Shown: positions 2,830 through 46,556 of the stretch, piece after piece
How the letters are laid out: each line of letters opens with the position of its first letter
How positions within the stretch are numbered: the stretch's first letter is position 1
Assembly (NCBI RefSeq): GCF_018977255.1
Contig: NW_024704758.1
Location: 5,580,001-5,644,000 of the forward strand
DNA from: Callorhinchus milii
Lineage: Eukaryota
Length of the DNA stretch: 64,000 nt
Direction of reading: 5' to 3'
Notes under the pieces: model-generated
Database searches by the model: none
What the model was told of the DNA's origin: nothing
The model's input: the letters and a program-made list of their open reading frames with translations, nothing else
Translations under genes and position numbers: made by a program

Positions 2830-3143
2830 CTAAACCAACAGGCTGGTAAACTTCTCCACAACATCATTTGTTTTTGCATGTCGAATTTCACAACTAAATT
2901 CCTCTGGTTCATCATCTGGTTTCAGCTCAACTTCTAGCTGTGTAAATGTAGAGTAAAGTCCATTTTCACCAATGCGGGGCACCTGTACAAATTGTTCTTC
3001 GGCAAAATCCGTCCATCCCTTACTCCACAGAATGGCAATGTCCCCTGGGCAAAAGTCATCAACCGTGCAAGACAATGTTAATGTTTCACCAATTTTGGGT
3101 CGATCAGGTTTGTGTATGATTTCTGACACCTTAGGAGGTACAC
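2830..3143 (-). CDS. Gene E post-TM Ig C1 domain 6 (last coding exon)
   Basis: ttttcag|GT GTA CCT CCT; LSCTVDDFCPGDIAILW...FSCEIRH...EKFTSLLV then TAG, followed directly by gtatgt. Confidence 0.85.
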
Positions 3144-6100
3144 CTGAAAACACAGAAGCAATGCTTAATGTAAGATCCACGATAGCAACCACATGATGAC
3201 ACAATTAACGAGAAGGAATAAAACTGTTCTGAACTTTAACAAGATGTTATGTGTCAGGCTGGCTCAGTGCTACTCACTTGCCTCCGAGCCAGAAGTAGTG
3301 AGTTCAAGCCAGTCCAGGCTGACATTCCAAAACAATGCTGGAGATTGCACTGCATAAATGGAGGTAATGTCTTATCATTAATAATATGCTTCAACGGAAA
3401 AGACTGACAATCCAACAATAAAATGCAAAAGTGCATCAGTCTCATGCTAAATAAGACCTTCTACCCATGCAATGAACACTATTAAGTCCAAAAAAGGTCA
3501 GTAATGTGAAAATTTGTTGCAAGATTTCAGAAATATATTAAATGCTCAGAATATACTCACGTTTTAGAGGCAAATGACAACGTCTTTTGAACACGTCTGT
3601 TTTGTTATTTTCTTTGTAATGAAAAATTAAATCTTTTTCAAAGTCGTCTGCAGTCAGGAGGAATTTCAAACAACTTATCATGCTGTAAGTGTTTTGAAGT
3701 TCCTGAGTTAGACTGGAATTCACAACTCCTTCAGTAACACGATTGTCCCCTTTGTACCACTCAATACTAAAATCTTTATGACAAAGGCCATTCATTGTTT
3801 GGGACACAGTTAAGTGTTTACCAAACTTAAGAATCTTTGGTTCCAGTACGAATTCTGAAAATCTGGGAGAACCTGTAACAAGATTAGAAAAATTCTTAAT
3901 AGGTACAAATATGAATAAGTCCTGATGAATCTATTTTATTAAACTGTCTAGATATGTCATGTCTACACAAATTGTTAACTCTCCATGGTTTCTGATAACA
4001 TGAACAAGCACTAACCAGTGCAAGAGACACAATTTCTATTTGAATAAAGCTTGTGTTAAACCAGCAAATCATGGCAAAGAGAGCTGGGAACACAAAGAAT
4101 TAAGCATCTTTTTCACGGGCACATTATCTTACATAAAACACTAGCTTCAGGTACAATTTATTTTGAGGGTGGGGGGGGCGCGAGGAGGAAAGAAAGGTGC
4201 CAGTACAGTCTTGTGTTTCTTTTGCTACCTTTAAACACAAACAGAATAGCAAAAAAATCGGTAAAGACTGTCCTTTGAATTTCTTCTTTGTTGTTCGCCT
4301 TTAGAACTTTGGAAAAAGGGAAGCAGAGCGATGAAGATTAATAAAGACTTAGCATCAGTCTAATGGTAAAAGTTATATTTTCTGGGGACAATTGGACTTC
4401 GATTTTCCCTGAGCACAGACTAATATATATACTGTATACCATCATTTGTCCTGGATTGTCCAGTTTTACTTCAAATGGTTTATTAAAGTTACCACTTCAA
4501 AAGCAACATGGTATAGTAACAGCATACCTATTGGTCTAGCATAATTTTTGGGATTACTCTCATCCCCTACATTGCTCATAGTTCCCACCTCATTTCCTTA
4601 CGTATTGATGGACATTTGTAATGTCCTGCAATTAAATATTGTTCAAGTTACCTTTAATCAACAGTTGATAAGTATGCCTGTAAGGTTTGGTTGATGATTT
4701 TGAATGGCAAATTTCTACTGTGTATTTGGCTTGATGGTCATCAGTGGTTGGAGTAAGGGTGACTGTGGTAACTATACAGTTCAGACCATATTCACTGGAT
4801 GATTCTTTCGTAATTGTTCCGTACTTCCCATTCATTTCCATTGCCACATTGTCTCTGAACCACTCGACCTGAATGTCTTTTGGATAAAACTCTTTTATCG
4901 TGCAGGTTAAAGTCAATTCCTTTCCGATTTCAGGGATGGAAGGGTCGCTCAACACTTCTGATACCTTTGGGAAAGCCACTGAAATACAGAGAAAGTGGAA
5001 GAAAAAATGTAAGGTACGATTACGGTTTCAAATCAACTGAAAAGCACAAAATAGGTGAAAACTCTCAATCTTCATCCCAACATATATGTTCATCCAAATT
5101 AATTCAATAAGTATCAATAATTGAAACAAAAAACAAATGTATTCTTCTGGAATATGTGCTTCACAAAATTACTTGGCAGAAAAAAACTTCAAACATACCC
5201 AGGTTTTCAGGAATGTATTCTTCGACTCTTGGATACATAAGACTCTCATGATTAACCTCACATTTGTACACACATTTCAGGTCTAAGAGCGACACAGTAA
5301 ATGCATATTGACTGGTCAGTTCAAACACGTTTTTCTCAAGAGAACCTTGAGTTATCTTCAGCACCTCATCGGTTTCAATAAGATCCTTGTCTTTAAACCA
5401 ACGAACCACTATTTCTTTCGGATAAAATGAATGCACTTTGCAGGACAAAGTCAGTTTCTCTCCAACTACAGAGTTTGGTGGGTCACTCACAATGGTATTC
5501 AGGATTGGAAAAGCTGGAAAAGAAAATGAACAGCTTATAACTGCTTCCAACATATTTCATACAGTAATCCTTGCATTTGATAAAGCATCTTATCAGCCGT
5601 TGAAACGTATCAATGTGCTTTTACGTAAAGTGTAGTGACTGCTTATTTGTAGGTGAATGTAAAAGAATTACCTTTAACTTGCAGTTTGACAAATTTCTCA
5701 ACTGGGTTCTGCAAGGCAATATGCTGAACTTCACAAAAGTACTGACTGTTTTCAGTTTCTTCAATTGTTGCATTGAATAGCAGCATACTGCGAACACTCT
5801 GAGTGTGGTCAGGATAACTGAATTCACTCAGACTATGGGAAAACTCTGCTGCACACCAGCTTTCATCAACTCCATTAATACATTTTACTATGGGACGCTT
5901 CTCCCCATCATCCTTTATTTTGTACCACTTGATAACCAAGTGACTTGGTTTGAAAAAATTAATGGGACACGTCAACATGACTGAATTGTTATGAAGCACA
6001 ATAGGAGGTTGAATTATTTCATCCAATTTCGGAGGAACTAAAGGGAAAGAAAAAAAAAACATTACTTTGGTTGGAATCCCACATTAGCTGTGAAGGTAAA

Positions 6101-9100
6101 TAGTCACTTGATAGTAATATCATTTGTTGATAGAGAACACATTATTTTTCTACAATGTATCATGAATTACTAACTTGGGATTTGGTAAAACAATCAAACC
6201 AAGGAACCAGAGATAGTTGATACTACTGTTTATTACAGTGTGAATTTGGGCTTAAGGCTGCATGGAATTGTAGAAAATTTACTTTTAATTTGGAAGTTTT
6301 TTTAAAATATATAAACTGCAGTTTCCAAATTAAGACCAAATTTAAAGATTTGTCACAATGCTGTGCAATTTCCAAATGAAAGATTTTCAGGCACATCTCA
6401 AACACTCCTGGACTGGATTTAAGGATACAGATTTGGTATCTGACTAACAGATTAGATCCAGAAACCAGTGTAATCAGATGCTGGAGTGCAGCATCTGAGT
6501 GAACTGTATGGATGTGCTGTTTTATTCACCAGAAAGTAATTGGGGAAAAGATGGTGGAGAGAATTCAACAAGACATTAACCCAAGAATTCAAAATCATGG
6601 ATCTTCGGTACAGATTTAGATCGCCCATAAACGATGAGGTTTGAGAAGGCATTGCCATAGCAACTTGCGACTATAATTACAATGGGCACAAATTGGAGAC
6701 ATGTGTGCTCCAAGCAAAAAATTTCACAGCAGCTACGCGTAATAGAAGTTACTATTAATTGACATTTGTTCACTTACTTCCAGTAACATCTAAAGAGAGG
6801 GTTTTGATGACTCCTTTGCCAGATGGATGGATCACTTCGCACATGATTTTGGCTTGGTTGTGCTCATTTATGTCAGGAAAGATACAAAGAATGCTGGAGA
6901 GACTGAATGTTCCATCTTTATTTTTATAAACATTGGCTGTTTTGACTTCCCACTGATGAAGATTCTCGTAGATTGCGATCTCAGAGTCTGGGTTTTTGTT
7001 CTTTTTACCACCAAAAGGTAAACTTTGCATTTGACTTTTAACATATTGCCCAATCAATTTATTCTGCCCTTCCTTCATGTTCTTCAGGTACCAGAAAATA
7101 GAAATAGCTTCGGGTTGGAATCCAGAGACGTGGCACATTAATTCAGCCAATTCTCGGTGTACAATACGAGCGGGTATTTTGATACCTGAAATTTTTGGTG
7201 GAACTGAGAATAAAACGAAATAAGTCAAAGCCGAGAACATTTCAAATTGCGTTTCTCTAACATCTTCAATCCACGACTGTTTGTGGGACGCTGCTGTGCG
7301 CAATTGGCTTCCGTGTTTCTCCCACAAATATACAACCAATTCACTTTACAGTATATTCTGTGAAGCGCTTTGAGACATGTGGAGTCCTGTAGCTCAGTGG
7401 TTAGAGCACTCGCTTTGCAAGCGAGAGACCTGAGTTCAATTCCAGGCAGGTCAGGGCGAAACCTTGGGCAAGTTTCCTTACTCCACACAGAGCCTAATAA
7501 TAATCCCTCCAAAACCAAAAACAATAATAAATTGGTCATTTTCAAGCTACGACTGTTTGTGGGACATTGCTGTGCGCAATTGGCTGCCGCGTTCGCCCAC
7601 AAATATACAGTCAATTTACTTTACAGTGTGTTCTGTGAAGCGCTTTGGGACGTCCTCCCGACGTGAAAAGCGCTATATCAAATGCAAGGATTATTATTAT
7701 TATTATCTAGAAGTCGTGAAAAGCGCTATATCAAATGCAAGGATTATTATATTTTTATGAGCAGCTCCATTCGCATCTGATACCCTCTTAATATTAGCTT
7801 GAGAGAGGGAACTAGATTCATACCTAAAAAGGAGAGGTATGGAGAAAGGGCAGATAAATGGGACTGAAAGGATTGCTCTTTAGTACAGACAGGACACACA
7901 TGATGGGATGACAAGGGGAGTCGACACTTAACTGGCCAAACAAAAGTGTCTATGAATAAGTTAGAGTGGAGGGAAAAAGAGATAATCAAGCAACTACAAC
8001 ATGTCTGTTCCATACAAGATACATAAGAAAATCTACATAACTACTGGACAGAGGAGCTTTCACCCCCTTAAACTGCTAGTTTGCGCAGGGTCACCTTACC
8101 ACAGATATATTCCCTATTAGTAGCACACAAAATTTCCAAATGATTACCTTTATAAAAGTACTTCATGTAAGCATAGATCCCAAATATTATTGCTGCAACA
8201 GTGAATATAATGCTCATGACGATACTTGCAACGACCGATCCTTGAGAAATACGAATTTCTGCCTCTGTGAACAAAAATAAATAACATTTTGTTAAAATAC
8301 TTTTCAAATTAACTTTGGTTTTCAATTGCTCAGAATGCTACAGCAGAGAATAACAAGTGCCTAATACTTAATCAGGGAGACCAACAAAGATCAGACCTAT
8401 CAGTATCGTACATTTTGCAGAACAACATGGAATTTTCTGGAGAAAATGGGCTGTGTCATTACCCAGTAAGGATATTTCAAGCATACTTTCTCAATACTTC
8501 ATCTTGGTTGAGAATTTTCACCTGTGTTAAAACAAGTGCCTCGCAGGTCTATGGCCTTGCAACTTAATGTGGCTGTTTCTGCTGAACAGTAGGTAGCACA
8601 GTTTATCGCACATCCTCTCCCACACAAGGATCTGTGTGTTAACCAACACCCTCATCCTTGCCTAGCTCCACTGTTCCCTGTACCCTCATCAGATCAACTT
8701 CAAGATCCTGACATTGGTAAATCCCTCCACACCTTTGTCACATTCAAACTTCTCCAATTTCCTCCAGCCTCACTCTCCTGCCCACTCCACAAACTGAGTC
8801 CTCTGGCATGTCTGGCTTCCCCACCATCAGTGGCCAAGCTTGAACAAACTATGCTTCCGTTCTCTGAAACTCCCTCCCAAAATCCCTCATCTCAATCTCA
8901 ATCTTAGAATTTCATCTAGAAGTCCACGCCTTAGCCCTATCTTCAAAACCCTTTTTAAAAAAATCTCTCCGATTTGTACCTCGTCACCTTTCCACCTACG
9001 TTTTGAATCAGAGGTTATGTTTGCCATTTTAATAAACAACAAAGACCACTGCAACTGACCTTTCAAAGTAACATGAGCTTCCACGGAGAATGGCTTTTTA

Positions 9101-11497
9101 AACGTCTTGTGTTTTGCTTCACATTCGAAAGTGCTGCCAATATCTTCTTTGACAGGTAACAGTCGAACCTGAATGGACATATTGCACAGTCCATCAGTGT
9201 CAATGACTCTTTGGCTAATGCATATATCTGTTAACTGCTTCTTTTCTCCTTGTCGCATCTTCTGAAACCACTCAGCACTGGCTTCGCAAGGATAAAATCC
9301 ATTTAGCTGACAATCCAAGGTCATCTCTCCTCCAAGGCCGAATTCCACCGTTTCTTCTGAAACCACAATCACTGAGGGCCGTGCTGCCAGAACAAACACA
9401 GGTGTTGTAGTGTAACATAAATACCTACAAATACACTATCACTTTACAGTTAAAATTATGAATCAAAGTGACAAGGCGCTACACCAAATGCAAGGATTAT
9501 TATTATTGTATACAAAACAAACATTTAGCATTCCTTTTTACAAGCTACAAGCGCTTTGAGAAATCCTCCCAATGGGAAAGGTGGTATATCAAAACCAAGG
9601 TTATAGGATTCTTAAGTAATGTTTGCATCAATCACCAGCAGCTTACCTAAAACTTCAAGACGTACAGTGCCAGTAGCTTGCTCATTTGGGGGCACAAATA
9701 CTGTGCACTTATATTCTCCCATTTGTTTCATCGTCACGTTTTTCAACAACAGCGACATGTTCCCTTTTAGGATGGAAGATTCCAGCAGCTCAACGCCTTT
9801 CCCCAATTTGAATAAGGCTCCGTTAATATACTTAAAAATATCATCAGTGAAGGACCACAGAACTCCAAGGTGGTTTTTGTCCAACGTAATGCCCGTCAGG
9901 TCAGCAATTTCACACTGTAGGGATACGTCTTCATTTACCAAACATTCAGCAGGACTCGTTCTCAATGTCATCCTTGCGGCTGTCGATATAAATAAAGGCA
10001 ATTCAGTATTATTCAGGAAAAGAAACGTAAATACATTTGACCCACCTAAACTGTTAACAAGCGAATAATTCCTCCATTGCCCCTCTCGGAAACACAGACC
10101 AAAAAGACTACGCGTGTCACAACGTGATCTATTCCGTCACTTGAAGACGAGCACAATTGGAAGCAAAATAGAAACTCCAAATTTCGCCCTCAAAATCCTT
10201 TACAGTGTGTCCTGTGAAGCGCTTTCAGGCGCCTCGAAGACGTGACGAGGCGCTGTATCAAATCCAAGGATTATTATTGTTATAATAGGTGTCACTTGTA
10301 CTGGGGTGGGGGGGGGAAATGGACACCCTGTACCCTAAGGGGGGAATAGACACCCTGTACCCTAAGGGGGAAATGGACACCCTGTACCCTAAGGGGGGAA
10401 TAGACACCCTGAACCCTAGGGGGGGGGGGGAAGGGGGATAGACACCCTGTACCTAAGGGGGGGGGGTTAGACACCCTGTACCCTGGGGGGGGGGGAATAG
10501 ACACCCTGTACCCTGGTAGGGCGGGGGGGGGGGGGGGAATAGACACCCTGTACTCTAAGAGGTGGGGGGGGCTTAGACACCCTGTACCCTGGGGGGGGGG
10601 GGGGTTAGACACCCTGTACCCTGGGGGGGGAATAGACACCCTGTACCCTGGGGGGGGGGGGGAATAGACACCCTGTACCCTAAAGGGGGAATAGACACCC
10701 TGTATCCTAAGGGGGGAATAGACACCCTGTACCCTGGGGGGTGGGGGGGGTTTAGACACCCTGTACCCTGGGGGGTGGGGGGGGTTTAGACACCCTGTAC
10801 CCTGGGGGGTGGGGGGGGTTTAGACACCCTGTACCCTGGGGGGTGGGGGGGGGTTTAGACACCCTGTACCCTGGGGGGTGGGGGGGGGTTTAGACACCCT
10901 GTACCCTGGGGGGTGGGGGGGGGTTTAGACACCCTGTACCCTGGGGGGTGGGGGGGGGTTTAGACACCCTGTACCCTGGGGGGTGGGGGGGGGTTTAGAC
11001 ACCCTGTACCCTGGGGGGTGGGGGGGGTTTAGACACCCTGTACCCTGGGGGGTGGGGGGGGTTTAGACACCCTGTACCCTGGGGGGTGGGGGGGGGTTTA
11101 GACACCCTGTACCCTGGGGGGTGGGGGGGGGTTTAGACACCCTGTACCCTGGGGGGTGGGGGGGGGTTTAGACACCCTGTACCCTGGGGGGTGGGGGGGG
11201 GTTTAGACACCCTGTACCCTGGGGGGTGGGGGGGGGGGGGAAGACAGTGGTGGGTCAACATTTACTGAATATTTGGGTTCAAGACCTCCACCTCTTCCCG
11301 CTCTCACGTGACATACCCCCCGCGCCCCCCATCCCGGACCCCAGCGATGCTCCGGGTGACGGCCTCATGAGACAGTGAAGAGCCGAGGCCTCCCCCCCCC
11401 CCCCCCGGGGCCCCGGGACTGTACCTCGCGGCGGCGGTGACAGGAGCAGCAGCAGCGCGGCCAGACCCAGGCCCAGGCCCAGGCGCTGCCCCGACAT
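2830..11497 (-). CDS. Gene E: type I Ig-superfamily receptor, SP-V-C1-TM followed by six C1-type Ig domains (predicted cytoplasmic), about 968 aa
   Basis: Exons (minus): 11425-11497, 9647-9979, 9060-9383, 8148-8264, 6778-7203, 5672-6037, 5199-5513, 4652-4978, 3561-3872, 2830-3143. All have AG/GT boundaries and phase-1 junctions. They sum to 2907 nt = 969 codons ending in TAG. Confidence 0.85.
3561..3872 (-). CDS. Gene E post-TM Ig C1-like domain 5 (both canonical Cys lost)
   Basis: cttgttacag|GT TCT CCC; GSPRFSEFVLEPKILKFGKHLTVSQTMNGLCHKDFSIEWYKG...; donor C|gtgagt; 312 nt. Confidence 0.8.
4652..4978 (-). CDS. Gene E post-TM Ig C1 domain 4
   Basis: atttcag|TG GCT; LTCTIKEFYPKDIQVEWFRD; F-strand reads YTVEI (no Cys); donor gtaact; 327 nt. 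Confidence 0.85.
5199..5513 (-). CDS. Gene E post-TM Ig C1 domain 3
   Basis: LSCKVHSFYPKEIVVRWFKD...YKCEVNHESL; donor gtatgt; 315 nt. Confidence 0.88.
5672..6037 (-). CDS. Gene E post-TM Ig C1 domain 2
   Basis: VPPKLDEIIQPP...LTCPINFFKPSHLVIKWYK...YFCEVQH; donor gtaatt; 366 nt. Confidence 0.88.
6778..7203 (-). CDS. Gene E post-TM Ig C1 domain 1 with long internal insertion
   Basis: PPKISGIKIPARIVHRELAELMCHVSGFQPEAISIFWY...DGTFSLSS...IMCEVIH; donor A|gtaagt; 426 nt. Confidence 0.88.
7381..7752 (+). mobile_element. Young SINE, full length, with duplicated 3' tail; preceded by a 3' half-copy (about 7263-7375)
   Basis: Same head, core and tail; the tail is repeated at about 7706-7752. Confidence 0.88.
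8148..8264 (-). CDS. Gene E transmembrane exon
   Basis: EAEIRISQGSVVASIVMSIIFTVAAIIFGIYAYMKYFYK: hydrophobic run followed by basic residues; ttcacag|...|gtaatc; 117 nt. Confidence 0.88.
9060..9383 (-). CDS. Gene E extracellular C1 exon
   Basis: LDCQLNGFYPCEASAEWFQ...FECEAKHKTF; donor gtcagt; 324 nt. Confidence 0.9.
9647..9979 (-). CDS. Gene E V-set exon
   Basis: VSLQCEI...GVLWSF...GNMSLLLKNVTMKQMGEYKCTV; donor gtaagc; 333 nt. Confidence 0.9.
10310..11240. repeat. G-rich minisatellite of about 30 units (about 30-33 bp, agacaccctgtaccctgggggg...) in gene E intron 1
   Basis: Tandem units read directly; long G runs. Confidence 0.9.
11425..11497 (-). CDS. Gene E signal-peptide exon
   Basis: MSGQRLGLGLGLAALLLLLSPPPR G|gtacag; GC/CpG-rich; 73 nt, phase 1. 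Confidence 0.75.
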
Positions 11498-16431: not shown

Positions 16432-16447
16432 TTAAACAAAACTCACC

Positions 16448-36200: not shown

Positions 36201-39200
36201 TGGAAAACTGACAAAGGCATTTTTCACGATTGGCTTGGTAAATTTCATATGTTCGACACGGAAAGAAAATTCCTTTTCGTAATCCTGGGCATTTGGCACC
36301 AGTTTCAGGCTAGAAGAAAACCGATAGCATCCACCTTCATCTGGATCAGGACCCTGATTAGTGATCCCTTCGTAGATCTTATTGTTCTGCTTAAGCCATG
36401 ATGTTGTGATGCTCTGAGTTGTGAAGTTGCTCACATTGCAGGTGAGAACAAGTTCCTTGCCATACACAGGCTCTGGCGGCTCAAGTATGATGTCGGAAAT
36501 TGATGGGATTCCTGTTTAAAAATCGAACAGATGGGATATTGTTGATAAATTTTAGGTCTGCAATTTCACATCATCTTAGCCTTTGGGATCATTTTGCCTT
36601 GAAAATCAAGATGGCACAGAATTGTGGAAAATTGTTTGATTTAGTTGTCATTTTAAAGATCCACTTATATAAAAAAAGGTTCCAAATTAAGACTGGGTTT
36701 AAAACATTACACATCTCGGGGTAATGTTAAATTTCAAGACAACCTGGTCTCAAAGGCTACGACTAGGAATTTCAAGGCACCTTTCTTCCTTTTAAAAGAT
36801 CAAACGGCAGAATGAAGAGAGCCTTCAGCTATTTTGTTCAAGGCCAAGATTAAATGTATAAAAAAATAACCTGTGCACTTGGTATAGCGCCTTATCACAT
36901 TGTTGAAATGGCTCAAGCACTTCATAGGATCTACTGTTGTGTAGTGAGTGTGTATTTGTCAACAAATGTAGCAATACATTTGAGCACAGCAATGTCCCAC
37001 AAATAGCCCAGAAAGTGAACAACTACATTTTATCTTTAGGATTGTTGATCAGGACAATGGAAAAATTCCCATGAAATATCATAGTGCCACGGTATCTTTA
37101 ATGTCTATCCGACAGGCAGACTGGACCTTGGTTTAACATCGCATCTGAAGGACCTCTGACAATGTAGTGCTTCCCCCAGCACCGCACTGGAGTATCACTT
37201 TAAAATATGTGCACAAAATGGGGCCTTGAACAAACAAGCTTTTGACTGAGCAAGGATGCTACGAACTGAGCCAGGCTGATCGGAATGATACACACTTAGA
37301 AAGAAAATAGTCATTAAACCCAAGTTGCTATAAATTACATTGCTGAATTGCTGAAAATAATTGGATCATTTTTGTTTAGAAACACCACTGTGTAAAATGA
37401 ATGCGGGCTCAATAATCACATCTGGACATGGATACCAGGAATACATTCCTGTAGGGCAGCTTAGCTAGCAGGTTTGCACATCTAAATCGATGATAAAACT
37501 CATGTGAAACACCACACGTCTGTCCACTGATAAAATATTATTTGTCACAGTTAAAATTCTATAACTATAAATTTACATTTGTAGCTAAAATAATATTTAC
37601 CCTTTAAGTTCAACATCCGGCTGATCCTCTGTGGCTTACTGGAGGTTTCCACATGAAGAATTTCCATTGTGTATTCAGTGCCATGATCCAGTTCTGTTGG
37701 AATGAACGTCCACTTGGACTTGCGATAATACAGTCCGGTACTCAAATCTTGTTCAGTATCTTCACTTTCGAATTTTTGTCCTGTTATATCGAAACCCCGA
37801 ATCCAGGAAATTTTATTTTCCTTTGGATAGAAGTCATATGCCTTGCAGGACAGAGTAACGGATTTCCCTGCCTCCGGCGAGGGTGGATCAATTTCAATCT
37901 CCATCAGTTTGGGCGCAGATACTTTATTTGGAACAAGAAAAAATTAGTCAATTGCACATTGACAAACAAAATAATCAACTGGTTCACATTACTGGGTAGT
38001 ATTCAAACAAAATAACACCCCAAACCTTCAATATTTTAATAATAATAATAATGCATAATTATCCTAGTGCCTCATCACGTCGTTGAGTTATCTCAAAGTG
38101 CTTCACAAATTATCCTGCATAGAATCATAGAATTATACAGGACAGAAGGAGACCATTCGGCTCTTGTGTCTGTGCCAGCTCTTTGAAAAGAGCTATTCAA
38201 TCCCACTCCCCCGCTCTCACCCCATAGCTCTGCAAACTTGTCCTCCCCAAATAATTATCTACTTCTCTCTTAAAAGTTGTTATCGAATTGGCTTCCACAA
38301 CCCTTTCATGCAATACATTCCAGATCTGAACAACTCGCTGTGCGAAAAGTTTTCTCCTCACCTCCCGTTTCTTTTAACAACTACTTTAAATTGGTGCCCT
38401 CAGGTTACCGACCCACCCACCAGTGGAATTAGTTTCTCCTTGTTCACCCTATCGAATCCCCTCATAATTTTGAAAACTTCCATTAAGTCTCCTCTTAACC
38501 TGCTCTGCTCCCAGGAGAAGGGAGAGTTTCCCAGTGTCCTGACCAATAATCCCCCATATAAAGTTGGTCATTCACTTTATGATTTTTGTCGGAGATTACT
38601 GTATACAAATTGGCTGCCGTCTTTTGCCTACAAATACAGTCACTACACTTCCTAGTAAATCACGTGAAGCTCCTTGACATGTCCTGATGATGTGATAAGG
38701 CGCTATATCAGAAGTAAGAATTATTATCTTCTGAATTCGTAACCAAAACATAATGGTCCCTCCCTTCGTCTGGTTCAACTGATCCATAATTGTATAAAAG
38801 GTTGAATGACAGAATTGTTAGAAGTAGGCTTTGTGCTTTATCCTCTAAGAAACCCATTCATATTTATATAAGTAGCAAAACACTTTGGAATTTTATGCAA
38901 GATTCATTTATACATTTGCGATTTTATATCTGTCTATGAAAAATAACCAATGAAATGTTACAAAAAAATCATAACATTTCATAGCAAATTGAATACCTCA
39001 CTCTGCTATTTAGCACATTTCATAGAATATACAAAATGATGATCAACAGCGATCCTGACTGCACAGAATTAATACTCACCCAAACGGTCAAGAACCCAAT
39101 GGATCTCCGCCGGTTCTGTTAGGCTCTCGTGGTACATTTTACAAACATACTTGCTGTCAACATCCTTTCTCGTGGCTACAGTCGTCATGTTAGATGTAAA

Positions 39201-42200
39201 ATAGAACAACGCATTGTTTCCCAACATAGGCTCACTATCTTCCGATTCTAATGGGTTCTGCTCATTGTCCTTAAACCATTCAGCTCTGATTGTTTTGGGG
39301 TAAAAGAAATTGACCCGGCAGCTTAATTTCAAAGACTCTCCTGCCACTGGTGTTTTGGGGACTGACTGAATCTGCTCCAGTTTGGGTGTGCCTGAAAGCG
39401 GAACAATATGAACACAGCAATTAAATACAAGGACATTGCAGACATTTTGGAATTAAAATAGGAATTTTTCTTTTTGTCTGTTCATTTTAAGCCACATAAT
39501 TTTTCTTTGATATGTTAGGTAATATTCCCCCAATTACCACCCCACCCCATCCCAACCCCCCCCCCCACACACACACACACATCCACAGCACCCTCCAGTA
39601 TAATTAGCAAGTGTAGGTTTATAAGAGGCATGGCTTGGGGGCTACCGCATTACTAGAACCAGCTAAAACTCCGAGCACGACATTGCGAACACTGCTAGGC
39701 TTCCTTGCTTGTACAGTTCTGATCAACCTGCCCATTCAGCCTTTGACTTGCAAGGTTAACAGAATCACTGCCTCCAGAACCTCTTAACTAGAGCAAAATT
39801 AAAGTATTTCACTCCTGCAGTTCAGAGTTGTTTCAGTAAACTTTAAACATAAAGCATTTTTTAAAATAAACCTACCTTTAATATCCAGCTTAGTTTCTCT
39901 TTTTTCAACCTTGTCAGTGGCCTCATGATGCACCTCACAAACATACTTTATTCCCATGTCTTCCTGAATATCTGGTATAATATTCAATACACTGATGACG
40001 CTATATGTTTTATCCTCATACTGCATCTCACTGATGTAATGGTTAAACTTATTCGTCTGACTGGGGTTGGTTTCGAGCAACCTCTTTGTGTCTTTGTCGA
40101 GGTAAGCAATTTCTTTCTTGTTGCCAGCACCCCAGAGTTGGTACCAAATGATTTTCAATGGTTTTGGTTTAAATCCATTGATGGAACAGGCCAAGGACAC
40201 CAGCTCATTGTGAATGATGCGAGGTGGCAGCAAAATGTCCGAAATCTTCGGTGGAACTTTGGGAAAGAAAAATAGCAGAACAATGCATCAGAAAAGGAAA
40301 AGGTCCCATTTGCTGATTGGAATTTTCTCTGAATAAGCCACAGTTAAAAGGTAGCAATGCTTTTCCTGAAGAAATGCAAAACGATTTGAGATTTCTTACT
40401 TTTATGTAATCAAAGTGCTATGTAAATAATACTAAGAATCTTGCAATTGATATAGCATTATGTCTTTGAGATGCTTCACAGTGCTTCACAGAATATGCTA
40501 TAAAGTGGATTGACTGTAGAATTTGTGGGCGAAGCGAGGCAACCAATTATGCTCAGCAGTATAATAATAACAATAATAATGCTTATATTTGGTATAACAC
40601 CTTCCATGTCGGTAGGACTTCCCAAAGTACTTCACAGAATATACTGTAAAGTGCAGTGACTGTGTATTTTATGGGTGAATGCTACGGCCAATTTGTTCAT
40701 AGACAAATTTTATTTGGGTGATTGTTGGCCAGGACACTGGGAGAAACTCCTTTCTCTTTTCAAATAATGCTATGGACTCTTTGATATCCACCTGAACAGG
40801 CAGACATGGCCTTGATTTTTAATCTCATGCAAAGGAAGGCACCTCGAACAACTCAGCACATCCCAGCAACTTATTGGAAAGTCATCTTGGATTATATGAG
40901 TTCCAAGTCTCGGCACGGGGCTTGAACCCACAACCTTCTGATGAGAGTGCTACCAACGGAGATAGGAATGATCATTGTAACTTTTGCTAAATTTCCAGAT
41001 TACCAGCAAGGCATTTTCACATTAAGATGTTCACAGTAAAATCCTGTGAAGCACTTTCAGACATCTCAACAACAAATGTAAGGATTATTATTATTATATC
41101 ATGCGGAATCACGTGAAAAGTGTTAAATCATTTAGTTACCTCCAACGACCTCCAGAGTTATCTTCTCCTCCATCGCAATCCAAAGAGTTTCATGCTGCAC
41201 TTCAAAGGTTAATTCCATCCCGTTATCGCTGTACATGTCGGGCCACATTTTAATGACACAATTCACAGTGGAATTCCCATCTTTCAAACTAGTAAGTGAG
41301 AAATTGGGAGTAAAGGATTCATCACAACAGCCCTTTCCATTTGAGAGAAGATTCGCTTCCTCATCAGGATTTTTCAACATAGTATTGCTCCAACAATAAA
41401 TTTTCTTCTTTTCCTGTTCGCTTCTTTTGACCCATAAAGTGATGGAAATCTTAACCGGTCTAAAACCAATAACTTGGCAACTTATTAAGGCTTCTTCTTG
41501 GTGTCTAATAGTGGCAGGTTTGCTGATTTTAGTGAATTTTGGAGAAACTGAGGAAAGAAAACAGGAGTTAAAACCAGATATTCGAGTGTTTGCATGTGTT
41601 TGCTCTGTGTGCGCACTGCCACCTAAGCGCTGATTCCAGTAAGAAAATAGAATGGGAGACACTGTTTCATACGTGCACATTAGAACAACTTTAACCCTTC
41701 TGCCCTCATGCTCTGGGACTCCGGCTCACCCACTTCCCTCAATACCTATCTTTTCAACTGTGCTTTTACTTAGAATCTCTGGCCCAACTAGTCCTTGCTG
41801 GTGTTTATTCTCCACACAAGTCTCCACACACTCCATGTTCCCTCCCATACCCTTCTATCCCCTTCTCCCTCAAGCGTTACATAGCTTCCTCTTAGGTTCA
41901 AGCACCTCAAAATGTTAAAACAATTTTGCACGTCAACCTAACATGAAATTTGATATATAAATATAAACTGATGTTCCTGTACTTATGCATTTCACAATGG
42001 ATTTAAGAGGAAACTCGATCCATACATGAGAAAAAAAGGGAGGAATGAACAGCAGATTAGACACAAGATCACATTGAACAGATTCCTAGCACGTTGTAAA
42101 CTGAAAGCCTCCAACCAAGCAACACTTTACCTTTTTTAAAACGTGTTGTATAAACGAAGAACAGTCCAGCAAATGCCAACGTGCTCAGGATCAAGGTTCC

Positions 42201-45200
42201 AATTATAGCCCCAGCAATCGCTCCTCCCGATGTTTTCTCTGGTTCTGAAACATAACAAATAACAAGGTACAGTCTTCGAGGCAAAGGCAGCATCACAAGC
42301 AACATGGTGTCTAACGCATGGCAAATTTCTCCGCCAGAAAGGATCTAAAGTTCCAACAAATGAGCTGGAAAACCAATCACAACTTTCAGGATTCGAGAGC
42401 CAATATTATTTCTTTCTTCGAAACTCAAATCGAGAATCACAATCCAAAAGCCAAAATGAATGCCACAAGTCTGACTTTGCACCTAAGACCTTGCATCTAA
42501 AAGTGCAAACTGATTTTTATAGCTTCGTACACGATTCACAAGAGACGTTCATTTCGTTACTTTACTCATGAAATAGAATCATGGAAATTTACAGATCAGG
42601 AGAGGCCAGCCCTTTGAGTCTGCACCAGCTCTCAGAGCAAGCTTTTTGTTTGATCCCACTGCCCCGTTTTTCCCCCACCCCTTTCAAGGCTTTTTTTTTA
42701 TATACCCGTCTACTTTCCTCTGGAAACCCACAATGAACTCTTGCCTCTAACAGAGCCGTTCCACATCCCAACAGCTCTCTGTGTGTGAAAATATTTCTCC
42801 TAAGATCGCCTTTCACTCTTCTTGCAGCTATCTGATATCTATTTACCTTTCACGGTGAGTTTGGCCTCTGTTATCCATGGGCTACTAAATGTTTTGTGCC
42901 GAACCTCACACTTGTAGATGGCCCCATTGTCAACCATTGTTGGTTCAATCCGTATCACACTGGACACATTGAACGTTCCATCTTTGTCAGGCACTGGAAC
43001 ACCTGTGCAGATATCATTGACAACTGTCTCAGTGCTTCCCGATAAGATCTTGACCCACTTGATAGTGTATTCCTGGGGATAAAACCTGATAATGTTGCAC
43101 CTCACAGAGCCCTCTGAACCGCTCACCACAGTAAAGTGTTTTGTGGACAAGCTGACTCTTGGTTTAACTGCATAAAAGAAAAACATTAGGTTTAGAACAG
43201 TCACACTGAAAAACAAGCAAAGTCGCATCTTACTGCAAATGTTGTCTATTTTCCTGTCTCCGTTATTGTATATGCTTTGGAAAACCAGCTTCCATATTAC
43301 TGGAATTAAAGATTTTTTTAAATTCTGCCTGATCTTAAATTTTAAGACAAAAAATTGGTGCAGAAATTTCAAATTTTCTCTCAGTTCTTTCAGGAACTGC
43401 AGAATAATCAGCTTCAATGTTAAGATTGAATTCAACAATTTGCCAAACTCTGGACCTTCTAAAGTGCTAAAAAAAACAGCAAATCTAGTCTCAGATGGAA
43501 TTTCTATCCCGCAATGGTTTATCAGGCGAAGACTGGGTGGAATTCCAGGCCTCTCTAAATTGTTGGCATCTCTTTTGGAGCGGTTACTGGAAAATGAAAA
43601 TTCTCTTTACAAGCTTGTTCACTGATATTGGGGTGGAGAGGATGGGGGACATGAAGCAGACTGGTGTTTGCTGAGCAAAGGTAATGGTTGGGGCTTTAGG
43701 GTTATAGAAGGTGATCACAGAGGGAGGGTGGAACAAGGCCATGATTGGATGGATAGGGTACTCAAGGGATATGATAAAAGGGTAGGGAAATGAAAGTTGC
43801 AGATCAGCCATGACCTAATAAATAATGAAATAATCTGGTCGGACTGAATGATTTAATCCTGTTCCTATCTTCTAATGCTCTTAACAACTTAACACACATC
43901 CCAATGTACAGTTTGTTGAATCTCTTTACCTGACACCAGGATTGATGCAGATTTTTCTACTTTAGAAGGGGTAATAAATATAGCACACGTGTACTGTCCC
44001 TCGTCTTCAAATTGTACTCTCAAAAGTTCAAGGGTTGCATCTCCTAGTTTTAAGAGGTCGTCTGACATCCTTACTCCTGCTTTCTTTGAAATATGTTTTC
44101 CTCCATTGAACACGTAGATTTCTTTCTTAGTCATGTTCTTGTAAGAGAACAACCACTGCACAGCCAGATTGTCAAGGTTAAGTGTATCTGAGCCATAGTT
44201 AGTTATTTTGCACTCCAGCCTAACTGCTGTGTCTAATAGCACTTCCATTGGATTTTTAAATATGGTCACGTCAAAAGAACCTGCAGACGACAGAAAACAA
44301 AATGAATATTCCAACAACTTTATACAGCGCCCTTCACTTAGAATAACATCTCAGAGCGCTTTACAATGGCAGGGTGGACAACCAAGCCAGATGGGGATGG
44401 GTGGGAGGGGGGGTGGGGGGGGAGAGAGTAAGGCTGAAACATTAATATCTAATCCAAATATCAAAGCAAAAATAAAAGTTGAGGTTCTCCAACAGATTAG
44501 TGATAACTTCGACATAATGTGCTGTGAAATTATGCCCACAAAGTTTCACCCATCCCTACCCTTCTCCACTCATTGACAAATTCAACAGCATGAGGCAATT
44601 GACTGATTTCTAAGAGTTATAAGGTGAGACTCACTCCCTCGTTTTCAAGATACTGAACCTTTCAAGCTTGTAGCTCTTACCGCAAACAATATTAAGGCAC
44701 ATCTGAATTGTGTTTGTGTTGGAATTTTTAGTGTTACATTGAAACTTCCATCCTTTTATGTTGGTCTACCAATGTTGCTCTGAGTGGTTTATTATTTAAA
44801 AACACACTTTTTTACATCAACAGGAAAGCACAGTAAACTTGAGGAGGGAATTGCAACATTTGATGTGACACATACACAATTGTTACTCAATTTGTAACAT
44901 TGTTAACAAATGTGACATCAAACACAACTAATAATAAAATAATAATAATCCTTGCATTTGATATAGGGTTTTTCACGTCGTCTCAATGTTTCGAAGTGCT
45001 TCACAGAATAGACTGTAAAGTGAATTGACTGTACATTTGTGACCGAACGCAGCAGCCAATTGCGCACAGCAGTTTCCCACAAACAGTCATGGATTGAAAA
45101 TGACCAATTTATTGTTGTTTTGTTTTGGAGGGATTATTATTAGGCGTGTGGAGTAAGAAAACTTGCCCAAGGTTTCCTCCTGTACATTGTAAAGAACTTG

Positions 45201-46556
45201 TAACCTAATGTTGCATTTTAAAAGTACAGACCATTGCTGAGCTAAGTTCAAACAGATTGACTTTGCTACAAGATTTCTCCTCCTGACTACAATGCCGGTC
45301 TCCCCAGCTCCACCATTCACAAAATCCAACTGATTCAAAACTCCACCGCCTCTCCCATACCAAACTCCGCACTCCCATGAGCCCAGTACTGGCCAGACTC
45401 CACTGACATCCTGTTGCTGAATGAATCGATTTCAGGATCTCTGCTCTCACCTACAAATCACTTCATGCCCAGCACCTGCCTATCTTTCCAGCCTTGTGCA
45501 CATCAGTTGTCCCCTCCACCTTCTGCTTTTAGTTCATAGGCCCTAAAGCTCTGGAACTCCTTGCTTCGATCCCTCCACCTTGCCCCCTCTTGGCCCATCT
45601 TCAAATCTTACCGAAAGACCTTTTCCTTTAACCTTGTCTACATTCAATTCTTCCCAGATCTGCATCAAACTGTGCCATTGTTAAGCGCTCCGAAACACAC
45701 GAAGGGCATTATATAAATGCAAGTTATGATTGTTTTTAAGTGGAATTGAGAAAGTAAGCCCAAAACAATCTTTTCAGATGCACGGAGACAGCAGAACAAG
45801 GGGACACACATTTAATGGTCAGAAAAGGCAGACTCCTCAGAGTATTTCCTTACCCTGAGGGTAATTAATAATAATAATAATAATCCTTGCATTTGATATA
45901 GCGCTTTTCACGTCGGGAGGACGTCCCAAAGCGCTTCGCAGAACACACTGTAAAGTGAATTGACTGTATATTTGTGGGGGAACGCGGCAGCCAGGTCTCT
46001 CACTTGCAAAGCAAGTGCTCTAACAACTGAGCTACAGGACTCCTAATGACTGAAGCACATTATCAGGAAGTGGAACTTTAACATACACCTGAACACGCAA
46101 ATGGCACCTCAGTTTAACGTATTCAGGGGTGAATAGATCAAATGAGTCTTTATCCATACCCAGTGTGATCTACTAGTGAAAATAGCCTTTGCTCAGAGCA
46201 ATTCACTCACTGGACAAAGTCAAAAAAGGGTTGGATCCCGCCTCAAGTTAGTGTTAAAAGAACCTGACATATTCACACAAGCATAGAGGCAGTACTAAAG
46301 CATCCAGATTTTTTCTTTTGCACTAAAAATCTACAGTTTGCTGAGAATTATTTTATCATGGTAACAGGAAAATATTGATTTCTCTCTCCAGCCTCTACAC
46401 CTTCTCCACCACCACCACCTTCCACCCACCACCACCCAAACAACAAAAAACATAGTGCCTTAAAACAAGGCGAGTTACTTCACTACCTGCTAGGCAGAAG
46501 AGACTGCAGGAGATCAGAGCCCACATTAAGGTCGCTGCATGCAGATCGTGTCCCAT
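32912..46556 (-). CDS. Gene C: SP-V-C1-TM, six C1-type domains, acidic mini-exon, seventh C1 domain; about 1089 aa, intact
   Basis: Exons: 46487-46556, 43930-44280, 42847-43167, 42131-42244, 41140-41547, 39876-40256, 39080-39391, 37601-37921, 36200-36511, 35700-36014, 34025-34084, 32912-33216. Total 3270 nt = 1090 codons with no internal stop. Confidence 0.85.
34025..34084 (-). CDS. Gene C acidic linker mini-exon
   Basis: cccatttaag|AT GGT GAT...GAA G|gtaaaa; DGDDDEVDEPVSDEMKSDDE; 60 nt, phase 1-1. Confidence 0.72.
35700..36014 (-). CDS. Gene C post-TM domain 6 (B-strand Cys lost)
   Basis: VSLSISLSNYVPSGITVKWFKK...FRCEVTH; 315 nt. Confidence 0.85.
36200..36511 (-). CDS. Gene C post-TM domain 5
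   Basis: GIPSISDIILEPPEPVYGKELVLTCNVSNF...; F-strand reads FSFRVEH; 312 nt. Confidence 0.86.
36860..37280 (-). mobile_element. Older SacSINE1-like DeuSINE
   Basis: Deu domain plus tRNA-like head. Confidence 0.68.
37601..37921 (-). CDS. Gene C post-TM domain 4
   Basis: LSCKAYDFYPKENKISW...; F-strand reads YTMEILH; 321 nt. Confidence 0.86.
39080..39391 (-). CDS. Gene C post-TM domain 3
   Basis: LSCRVNFFYPKTIRAEWFKD...YVCKMYHESL; donor gtgagt; 312 nt. Confidence 0.88.
39876..40256 (-). CDS. Gene C post-TM domain 2
   Basis: VPPKISDILLPPRIIHNELVSLACSINGFKPKPLKIIWY...YVCEVHH; 381 nt. Confidence 0.88.
40560..40960 (-). mobile_element. Older SacSINE1-like DeuSINE
   Basis: Deu domain plus tRNA-like head. 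Confidence 0.68.
41140..41547 (-). CDS. Gene C post-TM domain 1
   Basis: VSPKFTKISKPATIRHQEEALISCQVIGFRP...; F-strand reads LTFEVQH; 408 nt. Confidence 0.86.
42131..42244 (-). CDS. Gene C transmembrane exon
   Basis: EPEKTSGGAIAGAIIGTLILSTLAFAGLFFVYTTRFKK G|gtaaag; 114 nt. Confidence 0.88.
42847..43167 (-). CDS. Gene C extracellular C1 exon
   Basis: VRCNIIRFYPQEYTIKW...DGTFNVSSVIR...YKCEVRHKTF; 321 nt. Confidence 0.9.
43930..44280 (-). CDS. Gene C V-set exon
   Basis: VRLECKI...AVQWLF...GDATLELLRVQFEDEGQYTCAIF; 351 nt. Confidence 0.9.
44930..45180 (-). mobile_element. Young SINE lacking the head
   Basis: Tail plus Deu core. Confidence 0.8.
45866..46043 (-). mobile_element. Young SINE with internal deletion
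   Basis: Deu core joined directly to the tRNA head (gcggcagcca|ggtctctc). Confidence 0.82.
46487..46556 (-). CDS. Gene C signal-peptide exon
   Basis: MGHDLHAATLMWALISCSLFCLA G|gtagtg; 70 nt, phase 1; ISRE 90 bp upstream. Confidence 0.72.

What the first reader, a model, noticed from the sequence alone, without database searches (positions are those of the whole stretch)
2830..46556. Family of type I receptors with arrays of 6-7 C1-set Ig domains on the cytoplasmic side of the membrane
Seen: genes C, D and E each run leader-V-C1-TM (hydrophobic run ending in K/R). They then continue, 0.27-0.95 kb later, into 6-7 in-frame C1-type Ig exons. I found no new leader, ISRE or second TM in between, and the protein ends at an Ig domain. 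Known: C1-set domains are typical of extracellular or lumenal adaptive-immune proteins (Ig, TCR, MHC, beta2m, tapasin, SIRP, B7-H6), whereas familiar intracellular Ig arrays (titin, obscurin, MyBP-C) are I-set. Inference: this is a receptor family that signals or scaffolds through an intracellular Ig array. I cannot name a characterised gene with this architecture, but cannot exclude that database models exist.
Basis: partly seen in the sequence, partly recalled or inferred. Interest (0 to 1): 0.93.

Follow-up and report, generated by a model that had tools for sequence, protein, structure and literature searches.

The report
B7-H6-like genes with post-membrane Ig arrays
Three neighbouring elephant-shark genes encode relatives of the NK-cell ligand B7-H6 whose membrane anchor is followed by six or seven antibody-type (C1) Ig domains that should lie inside the cell, an arrangement conserved from sharks to frogs and turtles and sitting unnamed in the databases.

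Summary
The window is Callorhinchus milii. Each runs leader, V, C1, TM exon, then 6 (C, D) or 7 (E) C1-type Ig exons. Every exon is phase 1-1 with clean AG/GT sites, and there is no second hydrophobic segment.

- **Corrections:** E has an extra 60-nt acidic exon. In this assembly D carries a 1-nt deletion in its Ig4 exon.
- **Transcripts:** a cDNA-derived UniProt entry and two RNA-like Logan contigs join the TM exon to the array. No database isoform lacks the TM.
- **Spread:** the architecture recurs in sharks, rays, coelacanth, lungfish, caecilians, frogs, turtles and a gecko, and distantly in bichir.
- **Ectodomain:** it is a B7-H6 (NCR3LG1) homologue.
- **Cytosolic placement:** supported by the signal peptide plus a single TM, the positive-inside charge bias, loss of the canonical disulfide in most array domains but never in the ectodomain, and an enriched acidic di-leucine motif in a predicted disordered loop of Ig1. 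Topology is still inferred, not shown.

These look like ligands rather than receptors. I rate it a new variant of a known kind; interest 0.7.

The parts
46487..46610 (-). Gene E (LOC103174895) leader exon. ATG options at 46610 (RefSeq), 46556 (reader) and 46526 (cDNA-derived entry). Donor GCAG|GTAGTG, phase 1.
43930..44280 (-). Gene E V-set exon
42847..43167 (-). Gene E ectodomain C1-set exon
42131..42244 (-). Gene E transmembrane exon (EPEKTSGGAIAGAIIGTLILSTLAFAGLFFVYTTRFKK), 114 nt, phase 1-1
41140..41547 (-). Gene E Ig1 exon. It holds the disordered insert with the EEANLL motif and has no F-strand Cys.
39876..40256 (-). Gene E Ig2 exon (C1-set, Cys pair kept)
39080..39391 (-). Gene E Ig3 exon (C1-set, Cys pair kept)
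37601..37921 (-). Gene E Ig4 exon (C1-set, F-strand Cys replaced by Met)
36200..36511 (-). Gene E Ig5 exon (C1-set, F-strand Cys replaced by Phe)
35700..36014 (-). Gene E Ig6 exon (C1-set, B-strand Cys replaced)
34025..34084 (-). Gene E 60-nt acidic linker exon (DGDDDEVDEPVSDEMKSDDE), predicted disordered.
32915..33216 (-). Gene E Ig7 exon ending in the stop codon (...HLKLS*)
26946..27009 (-). Gene D (LOC103174894) leader exon (MGGMSPNLLLVLLVVTWPPLS)
24949..25308 (-). Gene D V-set exon
23904..24224 (-). Gene D ectodomain C1 exon
23062..23175 (-). Gene D transmembrane exon, phase 1-1
22388..22789 (-). Gene D Ig1 exon (272-nt intron after the TM exon; DVKSLL motif)
21549..21926 (-). Gene D Ig2 exon
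20807..21118 (-). Gene D Ig3 exon
20144..20466 (-). Gene D Ig4 exon, 323 nt. A 1-nt deletion near 20422, relative to the older model, shifts the frame and gives a premature stop in this assembly.
17897..18208 (-). Gene D Ig5 exon (intact ORF, out of frame in this assembly because of the Ig4 deletion)
16448..16761 (-). Gene D Ig6 exon with stop TGA placed just before a retained GT donor
11425..11497 (-). Gene C candidate leader exon (MSGQRLGLGLGLAALLLLLSPPPR, donor CGAG|GTACAG). Inferred; not in the RefSeq model.
9647..9979 (-). Gene C (LOC103174893) V-set exon
9060..9383 (-). Gene C ectodomain C1 exon
8148..8264 (-). Gene C transmembrane exon, 117 nt, phase 1-1
6778..7203 (-). Gene C Ig1 exon (Cys pair kept; insert holds YENL)
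5672..6037 (-). Gene C Ig2 exon
5199..5513 (-). Gene C Ig3 exon
4652..4978 (-). Gene C Ig4 exon (F-strand Cys lost)
3561..3872 (-). Gene C Ig5 exon (both canonical Cys lost)
2833..3143 (-). Gene C Ig6 exon with stop TAG placed just before a GTATGT donor-like site

Best explanation
Genes C, D and E are three ancient paralogues of the B7-H6 (NCR3LG1) family. Each encodes a type I membrane protein.

- **Outside the cell:** a cleaved leader and a V-C1 ectodomain, predicted to be B7-H6-like and presumably a ligand for NKp30-type receptors.
- **In the membrane:** one transmembrane helix.
- **Inside the cell (inferred):** a tail of six or seven Ig domains. They arose by duplication of C1-type exons downstream of the TM exon.

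The tail behaves like a folded cytosolic module under purifying selection. Most of its domains have given up the canonical disulfide. Its disordered loops and linkers carry short motifs that work only in the cytosol: an acidic di-leucine adaptor-protein sorting signal in Ig1, and acidic Ser or Tyr stretches before Ig7.

The likely mechanism is that the array controls trafficking and surface display of the ligand and docks cytosolic partners. Butyrophilins do something comparable, coupling a B7-like ectodomain to an intracellular B30.2 domain. Human B7-H6, which has a different tail after the TM helix (known to me from memory only), would represent loss of this array.

Shown here: gene structure, the transcript join, family-wide conservation, B7-H6 homology, C1-type identity, cysteine loss, and motif enrichment. 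Inferred: topology, NKp30 binding, and the sorting or scaffold role.
For: **Structure and transcripts**
- All exons are phase 1-1 and give one ORF.
- V9K7L7 (P0039, cDNA-derived by my reading of its accession series, with allelic differences from the genome) and two intron-less Logan contigs (L001 3517 nt, L002 3886 nt) join the TM exon to the array.
- None of the isoforms examined lacks the TM: 9 Leucoraja, 2 Rhincodon, 2 Pristis.

**Family**
- The same L-V-C1-TM-Ig(n) plan occurs in sharks, rays, coelacanth, lungfish, caecilian, frogs, axolotl, turtles and gecko. Nearly all of the 63 non-redundant full-length members show one strong hydrophobic segment at about residue 230-330 and none later.

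**Ectodomain**
- The best solved relative is human B7-H6: E = 1e-24, against 1e-17 for CD276. Gene F gives 4e-22 and gene C 8e-14.
- The AF2 model superposes on 3PV7 and 6YJP at TM-score 0.88-0.91 and rmsd 1.9-2.8 A.

**Array**
- Pfam C1-set. The nearest solved relatives are IgG, IgA, IgM and IgE constant regions, SIRPalpha and UrIg2.
- The domains are related to the ectodomain C1 and to each other.
- They are as conserved as the ectodomain: 55-67% against 57-64% among elasmobranch orthologues.

**Topology signals**
- Net charge is -0.55 on the N-side flank of the TM and +2.95 on the C-side flank.
- Complete canonical Cys pair: V 20/20, C1 20/20, Ig1 0/20, Ig4 0/20, Ig5 2/20, Ig6 0/20, Ig7 5/14.
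- Cys counts in the array vary from 12 to 33 and are often odd.
- [DE]xxxL[LI] occurs in the Ig1 insert in 28 of 63 non-redundant members. Shuffling predicts 5.7, and control windows show 11%.
- That insert and the acidic linker are the only low-confidence segments inside the array (pLDDT below 50 at residues 333-349 and 961-982).
Against: - No experiment places the array. Topology rests on the signal peptide plus single TM rule.
- Ig2 and Ig3 keep Cys-Trp-Cys in every sequence. The C-type lineage, which includes gene C, also keeps the pair in Ig1 and Ig6. That is not expected if disulfides never form.
- I know of no C1-set domain that works in the cytosol.
- The TM exon is a symmetric cassette, so skipping it would keep the frame and give a secreted nine-domain protein.
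- One sequon in Ig5 (C-N-V-S/T-N-F-S/T) is shared by several cartilaginous fishes.
- The di-leucine motif is missing in C-type genes, skates and some frogs.
- Sequon density (observed/expected 1.06 in the array, 1.25 in the ectodomain) and amino-acid composition do not discriminate.
- Two key papers on shark and frog B7H6 could not be read.
Confidence: 0.75

Rival explanations
1. The array is extracellular or secreted. The TM exon is a cassette that is skipped in the isoform that matters, giving a soluble L-V-C1-(C1)6-7 protein, antibody- or UrIg-like. The TM-containing message would either be minor or end early through read-through and polyadenylation in the next intron.
For: - The TM exon is phase 1-1, so skipping keeps the frame.
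- Read-through after the TM exon gives a short tail and a stop in E (20 aa) and C (26 aa). AATAAA or ATTAAA signals lie in the following intron of D and E.
- Ig2 and Ig3 always keep the Cys pair, as do four of six domains in the C-type.
- All known C1-set domains are extracellular or lumenal, and the nearest solved relatives are antibody constant regions and UrIg2.
Against: - Every transcript-level record and every RefSeq isoform examined contains the TM.
- A search with the C1-TM-Ig1 junction found no TM-less fragment, although that search has low power.
- The TM segment with its basic C-side flank is conserved at the same place in every full-length member checked.
- The canonical disulfide is lost in 2-5 of the 6-7 array domains but never in the ectodomain.
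- A cytosolic sorting motif is enriched in a disordered loop.
- Sequons in the array occur at chance frequency.
Confidence: 0.12
2. A short membrane isoform (L-V-C1-TM plus a few residues) is the working NK ligand. The long isoform is a second, regulatory product of the same gene, so both exist and the array is used only in some tissues or states.
For: - Intronic poly(A) signals and short read-through tails follow the TM exon.
- Array-less relatives exist: gene F in this window, and a 273-aa Cetorhinus model with a V-C1-TM-short tail plan.
Against: - No short transcript of C, D or E was found.
- The array is as conserved as the ectodomain across more than 400 million years of divergence, the chimaera-elasmobranch split by my own estimate.
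- This reading is compatible with the main explanation rather than a replacement for it.
Confidence: 0.1
3. Annotation artefact: two separate genes, a V-C1-TM gene and an Ig-array gene, fused by the reader and by gene predictors.
For: Tandem duplication of a two-gene unit would give the same repeated pattern in raw DNA.
Against: - The gap between the TM exon and Ig1 is only 272 nt in gene D. That leaves no room for a promoter, a leader exon and an intron.
- There is no leader or start codon context before Ig1.
- cDNA-derived and Logan transcripts span the junction.
- The same junction...KK|VPPK..., is conserved from chimaera to turtle.
Confidence: 0.02

Closest known systems
Human B7-H6 / NCR3LG1 (ligand of NKp30; PDB 3PV6, 3PV7, 4ZSO, 6YJP)
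   Same: V-set plus C1-set ectodomain, best sequence match among solved structures, and a predicted fold at TM-score about 0.9. A type I membrane anchor comes directly after C1. NCBI already gives this name to the tetrapod members.
   Different: From my own knowledge, not tested here, human B7-H6 has a short cytoplasmic tail described as Gag-like, with ITIM-, SH2- and SH3-binding motifs. The genes here have 700-800 residues of C1-type Ig domains instead, and up to about 1,400 in frogs. They also carry a conserved extra Cys (D-I-C-T-G) in the ectodomain C1.
Butyrophilins (BTN/BTNL: B7-like V-C ectodomain, TM, intracellular B30.2)
   Same: A B7-superfamily ectodomain coupled through one TM helix to a large folded beta-sandwich module inside the cell. 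This is the best functional analogy, since in BTN3A1 the intracellular domain controls what the ectodomain signals (established knowledge).
   Different: The intracellular module here is an array of Ig C1-type domains, not PRY-SPRY/B30.2. Pfam finds only Ig families. No ligand for the array is known.
UrIg2, IgW/IgM heavy chains, SIRPalpha (multi-C1 arrays)
   Same: Runs of C1-set domains, each encoded by a phase 1-1 exon. These are among the best sequence and fold matches of the array (UrIg2 described in PMC12227049).
   Different: In those proteins the array is extracellular, lies before the TM, and every domain keeps the canonical disulfide (PMC12227049). Here the array follows the TM and most domains have lost the pair.
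Titin, obscurin, MyBP-C (intracellular Ig arrays)
   Same: Tandem Ig-fold domains working in the cytosol without obligatory disulfides.
   Different: Those domains are I-set, and the proteins are soluble or cytoskeletal with no signal peptide or TM. Here C1-set scores far above I-set: about 1e-64 against 1e-14 for the whole protein.
IGSF1 (Ig domains on both sides of an internal hydrophobic linker)
   Same: Ig domains both before and after an internal hydrophobic segment (abstract seen; the rest is from my own knowledge).
   Different: From my own knowledge, IGSF1 has a second hydrophobic stretch and a C-terminal TM, and is cleaved so that the downstream Ig domains end up outside the cell. The family here has a single hydrophobic segment and no C-terminal TM.

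Membership tests
B7-H6 / NCR3LG1 family | V-set plus C1-set ectodomain closest to B7-H6 among B7 relatives | tested here: met
   Human B7-H6 is the top PDB hit for genes E (1e-24), F (4e-22) and C (8e-14), each ahead of CD276. Foldseek gives TM-score 0.88-0.91 to 3PV7 and 6YJP.
B7-H6 / NCR3LG1 family | Type I membrane protein with the TM directly after the C1 domain | tested here: met
   Leader, one hydrophobic helix after C1, positive-inside flank. This is prediction only.
B7-H6 / NCR3LG1 family | Binds NKp30 (NCR3) | not testable with these tools
   Needs a binding assay with Callorhinchus NKp30-like receptors.
B7-H6 / NCR3LG1 family | Short cytoplasmic tail of the human type (Gag-like, tyrosine motifs) | tested here: not met
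   The tail is 6-7 Ig domains, and Pfam finds only Ig families. The human tail itself was not compared.
B7-H6 / NCR3LG1 family | Orthology by synteny with human NCR3LG1 | not tested
   The window holds only family members (C, D, E, F and a pseudo-V). No flanking marker genes were available.
Ig C1-set domain | Matches the Pfam C1-set model above its gathering score | tested here: met
   Met for the ectodomain C1 and for Ig2-Ig6 of gene E (31.7-44.2 bits against a cut-off of 21). Ig1 and Ig7 fall just below, at 17.6 and 17.2 bits. Whole proteins score 1e-56 to 1e-64.
Ig C1-set domain | Canonical B-strand Cys, C-strand Trp and F-strand Cys | tested here: inconclusive
   Trp is kept in all domains except Ig1. 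The Cys pair is complete only in Ig2 and Ig3 in all lineages, plus Ig1 and Ig6 in the C-type. It is lost in Ig4 and Ig5 almost everywhere.
Ig C1-set domain | Extracellular or lumenal location | not testable with these tools
   Sequence signals point to the cytosol. This needs a topology experiment.
Intracellular I-set arrays (titin type) | Domains best described by the I-set model | tested here: not met
   I-set scores 1e-9 to 1e-14 against C1-set 1e-56 to 1e-64 on the same proteins.
Butyrophilin | Intracellular B30.2 / PRY-SPRY domain | tested here: not met
   No SPRY or PRY hit in Pfam.
UrIg / UrIg2 | VJ-type V domain followed by C1 domains, all before any TM | tested here: not met
   The TM lies after the first C1. 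The V domain is closest to B7-H6, not to an antigen receptor. UrIg2 is only a mid-ranking hit for the array, at 6.5e-11.

The most novel reading that the evidence does not exclude
The array is the first case of antibody-type (C1-set) Ig domains working in the cytosol. It would act as an intracellular sensor or scaffold that gates surface display or conformation of an NK-cell ligand from the inside, as B30.2 does for butyrophilins. On this reading it is the ancestral state of B7-H6 in jawed vertebrates, kept in cartilaginous fishes, lobe-finned fishes, amphibians and some reptiles, and not seen in the mammalian protein.
Probability: 0.35. Interest if true: 0.9.

Novelty: new variant of a known kind. 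Interest (0 to 1): 0.7.

Why it matters
C1-set domains are the hallmark of the extracellular adaptive-immune proteins: Ig, TCR, MHC, beta2-microglobulin and tapasin. A family conserved for over 400 million years that places six to thirteen of them behind a membrane anchor would break that rule.

It would also show that the B7-H6/NKp30 axis, studied in humans as a tumour-recognition system, once had a large intracellular component. That opens three testable questions:
- How do Ig-fold domains adapt to a reducing compartment?
- What does the array bind?
- Is display of this NK ligand controlled from inside the cell in cold-blooded vertebrates?

The proteins sit in public databases, mostly as 'uncharacterized', so the material for these tests is at hand.

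Tried and rejected
1. **Shark Ig heavy-chain cluster (IgW/IgNAR) or UrIg2.** This was my first guess. Rejected because the V domain is B7-H6-like and the TM lies after the first C1.
2. **Two fused genes.** Rejected on intron size, transcripts and the conserved junction.
3. **TM-less transcripts.** A search with the C1-TM-Ig1 piece returned only one unrelated short model. The Logan fragment P0054 maps to Ig1-Ig2 and says nothing about the TM.
4. **N-glycosylation sequon density.** Ectodomain 1.25 times expectation, array 1.06 times. Too weak to use.
5. **Charged-residue and Cys composition, ectodomain against array.** Small differences, not used.
6. **ITIM or YxxPhi in gene C's Ig1 insert (IAIYENL).** Not conserved in C-type orthologues, so dropped as a family feature.
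7. **Literature.** Six full-text searches found no description of this architecture, and two narrower B7H6 searches added nothing. The two most relevant papers, Flajnik et al. 2012 Immunogenetics and Ohta & Flajnik 2015 Immunol Rev, are not held. Prior description cannot be excluded.
8. **Whole-model Foldseek.** It cannot classify single array domains as C1 or I-set because the inter-domain geometry is uncertain (pTM 0.40). I relied on Pfam and sequence matches instead.

Full report
**What is there**

The window matches Callorhinchus milii (elephant shark) gene models. My spliced model of gene E is 98% identical over its full length to RefSeq LOC103174895. Gene C is 100% identical to LOC103174893. 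Gene D corresponds to LOC103174894.

All three lie on the minus strand in tandem and share one plan: leader exon, V exon, C1 exon, a 114-117-nt exon encoding a hydrophobic helix followed by basic residues, then six (C, D) or seven (E) Ig exons. Every exon after the leader starts and ends in phase 1, with a polypyrimidine-AG acceptor and a GT donor.

Pfam calls the first exon V-set. It calls the ectodomain C1 and Ig2-Ig6 C1-set above the curated cut-off, with Ig1 and Ig7 just under it. On whole proteins C1-set scores 1e-56 to 1e-64 against 1e-9 to 1e-14 for I-set.

**Corrections to the observation**

- Gene E has an additional 60-nt exon (34084-34025) encoding an acidic linker between Ig6 and Ig7.
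- Gene D is not in frame in this assembly. The current RefSeq protein therefore stops at residue 710. I cannot tell here whether this is an allele or an assembly error.
- Genes C and D end with a stop codon placed immediately before a retained donor site.

**Is the TM exon really joined to the array?**

Yes, as far as public data go.

- The UniProt entry V9K7L7 (P0039, 1079 aa) carries several amino-acid differences from the genome, so it is independent of the genome prediction. It reads straight from the TM helix into Ig1. That this entry comes from the elephant-shark transcriptome is my reading of its accession series, not a tool result.
- Two Logan contigs from runs SRR5172151 and SRR5172152 (3517 and 3886 nt) carry uninterrupted ORFs of 958 and 949 aa with the same join. 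One is a D-type and the other a C-type orthologue.
- None of the RefSeq isoforms I examined lacks the TM: nine in Leucoraja, two in Rhincodon, two in Pristis.
- In gene D the intron between the TM exon and Ig1 is only 272 nt, which leaves no room for a separate promoter and leader.
- A search with the C1-TM-Ig1 piece found no TM-less fragments, but that search has little power.

**How wide is the family?**

A profile of 23 members finds 532 proteins at E <= 1e-30 among 1.84 billion representatives. Named members come from sharks, rays, coelacanth, lungfish, a caecilian, many frogs, axolotl, turtles and a gecko, with a distant relative in bichir.

Nearly all of the 63 non-redundant full-length members show one strong hydrophobic segment at about residue 230-330, followed by 400 to 1,800 further residues. 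In the members examined in detail there is no later TM. Frogs have versions with tails of about 1,400 residues.

Each of the three Callorhinchus genes has its own orthologues at 45-55% identity in elasmobranchs. The C, D and E types therefore predate the chimaera-shark split. NCBI labels the tetrapod members 'natural cytotoxicity triggering receptor 3 ligand 1' and the rest 'uncharacterized protein'.

**What the two halves are**

The V-C1 ectodomain is a B7-H6 homologue.
- Human B7-H6 is the best match among all solved structures for genes E, F and C: 1e-24, 4e-22 and 8e-14. CD276 comes next.
- An AlphaFold2 model built on the family alignment has mean pLDDT 83.3 and nine confident beta-sandwiches. 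It superposes on B7-H6 crystal structures at TM-score 0.88-0.91 and rmsd 1.9-2.8 A.

The array is C1-type.
- It is closest to antibody constant regions, SIRPalpha and shark UrIg2, by sequence and by fold.
- Its domains are related to the ectodomain C1 and to one another (20-58 bits), which points to old exon duplications.
- It is as conserved as the ectodomain among elasmobranch orthologues (55-67% against 57-64% identity), so it is under selection.

**Which side of the membrane?**

This step is inferred, not shown. A cleaved leader plus a single TM helix puts what follows in the cytosol. Four further signals agree.

1. The flanks obey the positive-inside rule: net charge -0.55 before the helix and +2.95 after it, averaged over 20 members.
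2. The canonical Cys pair is complete in 20 of 20 V domains and 20 of 20 ectodomain C1 domains. In the array it is complete in 0/20 Ig1, 0/20 Ig4, 2/20 Ig5, 0/20 Ig6 and 5/14 Ig7. In the C-type lineage Ig4 and Ig5 have lost it in 13 of 13. Total Cys counts in the array vary from 12 to 33 and are often odd.
3. The only low-confidence stretches inside the modelled array are an insert in Ig1 (residues 333-349, LKNSDEEANLLSNGKGC) and the acidic linker (961-982).
4. That insert carries an acidic di-leucine motif, [DE]xxxL[LI]. Examples are EEANLL here, DDVQLL in white shark, EEVHILL in coelacanth, EEAVPLL in lungfish, EEEQPLI and EDKEPLL in frogs, and ENAALL in turtle. It occurs in 28 of 63 non-redundant members, against 5.7 expected from shuffling and 11% in control windows further along the array.

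From established knowledge (cited from memory), this motif binds AP-1, AP-2 and AP-3 on the cytosolic face. The versions with a proline before the leucines resemble those of tyrosinase and LIMP-II.

In elasmobranch E-type genes the linker exon before Ig7 carries Y-x-N-[I/L] in an acidic setting. That would suit phosphotyrosine signalling, though tyrosine sulfation outside the cell would fit too.

**What does not fit**

- Ig2 and Ig3 keep Cys-Trp-Cys in every sequence, and the C-type also keeps the pair in Ig1 and Ig6.
- The TM exon is a symmetric cassette, so skipping it would give an in-frame secreted protein.
- A sequon in Ig5 is shared by several cartilaginous fishes.
- The di-leucine motif is absent from C-type genes and from skates.
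- Sequon density and composition are uninformative.

I therefore put the cytosolic-array reading at about 0.75. A TM-skipped secreted form as the product that matters gets about 0.12. A short membrane isoform alongside the long one, which is compatible with the main reading, gets about 0.1.

**Most likely mechanism**

These are ligands of the B7-H6 type rather than receptors. I propose that the cytosolic array does two things.
- It sets where and when the ligand is displayed, through adaptor-protein sorting via the Ig1 loop.
- It docks cytosolic partners on a rigid string of beta-sandwiches.

This would parallel butyrophilins, where an intracellular B30.2 domain controls a B7-like ectodomain. 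All of this part is inference.

**Comparison with the known, and novelty**

The family passes the sequence and fold tests for B7-H6 ectodomains. It fails the human type of tail. It is not a butyrophilin (no B30.2), not UrIg2 (TM in the wrong place, V of another kind), and not a titin-type array (C1-set, not I-set).

The gene models have been public since about 2014 (my estimate from the .1 accession versions, not a tool result). Six full-text searches found no paper describing the architecture, and two narrower B7H6 searches added nothing. The two papers most likely to mention it could not be read.

I rate it a new variant of a known kind. Interest is 0.7: surprising to an immunologist if the topology holds, and directly testable.

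Noticed in passing
window 55618-58300, minus strand: A fourth B7-H6-like gene ('F'): V exon 58300-57938, C1 exon 57125 to about 56800, and a phase 1-1 TM exon at about 55715-55618. No Ig array was found downstream as far as 49 kb. Its best solved relative is again human B7-H6 (4e-22), and it lacks the extra D-I-C-T-G cysteine of the array-bearing genes. A 273-aa basking-shark model has the same short plan.
   Followed up: partly
window 48525-48951, minus strand: A V-exon fragment related to gene F with in-frame stop codons, so a pseudo-exon.
   Followed up: partly
window 20380-20466 (gene D, Ig4 exon): One base is missing from a C-run (TTCCCAGAG in the older model, TTCCAGAG here). This shifts the frame, and the current RefSeq protein is cut to 710 aa. 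The downstream Ig5 and Ig6 exons are still intact ORFs. It could be an allele or an assembly error.
   Followed up: partly
window 2833 and 16448: Genes C and D end with a stop codon placed directly in front of a retained splice donor (TAG|GTATGT and TGAG|GTGAGT). It looks as if an internal Ig exon became the last coding exon through a point change. Gene E continues at the equivalent site.
   Followed up: no
window 10312-11236, 11908-12116, 26245-26682: GC-rich tandem repeats with units of 20-57 nt lie beside the leader exons of genes C and D. Local GC rises to 0.54-0.63 against about 0.40 elsewhere.
   Followed up: partly
window 51763-53150: A minisatellite of about 66 copies of a 21-nt unit with a strong G-over-C skew, lying between gene F and gene E.
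   Followed up: no
e.g. window 7228-7620, 12229-12629, 16073-16447, 27211-27531, 29408-29884, 31229-31544, 47018-47275, 47923-48512, 54657-54934: Many copies, on both strands, of one interspersed repeat that gives the same spurious ORFs (WSPVAQW..., LGKFPYST...IIIPPKPK...). It looks like a tRNA-derived SINE. Some copies sit inside introns of genes C, D and E.
   Followed up: no
ectodomain C1 exons 43167-42847, 24224-23904, 9383-9060: A third cysteine (D-I-C-T-G, in the D-strand region) is conserved in 20 of 20 array-bearing family members and is absent from gene F. It might make an interchain disulfide.
   Followed up: no
L001 and L002 (Logan contigs of SRR5172151 and SRR5172152): Two full-length spliced transcripts of D-type and C-type orthologues, from neighbouring sequencing runs of what appears to be a skate or ray (closest to the Rhinoraja and Leucoraja models). 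L002 still carries adapter sequence at its 5' end.
   Followed up: partly
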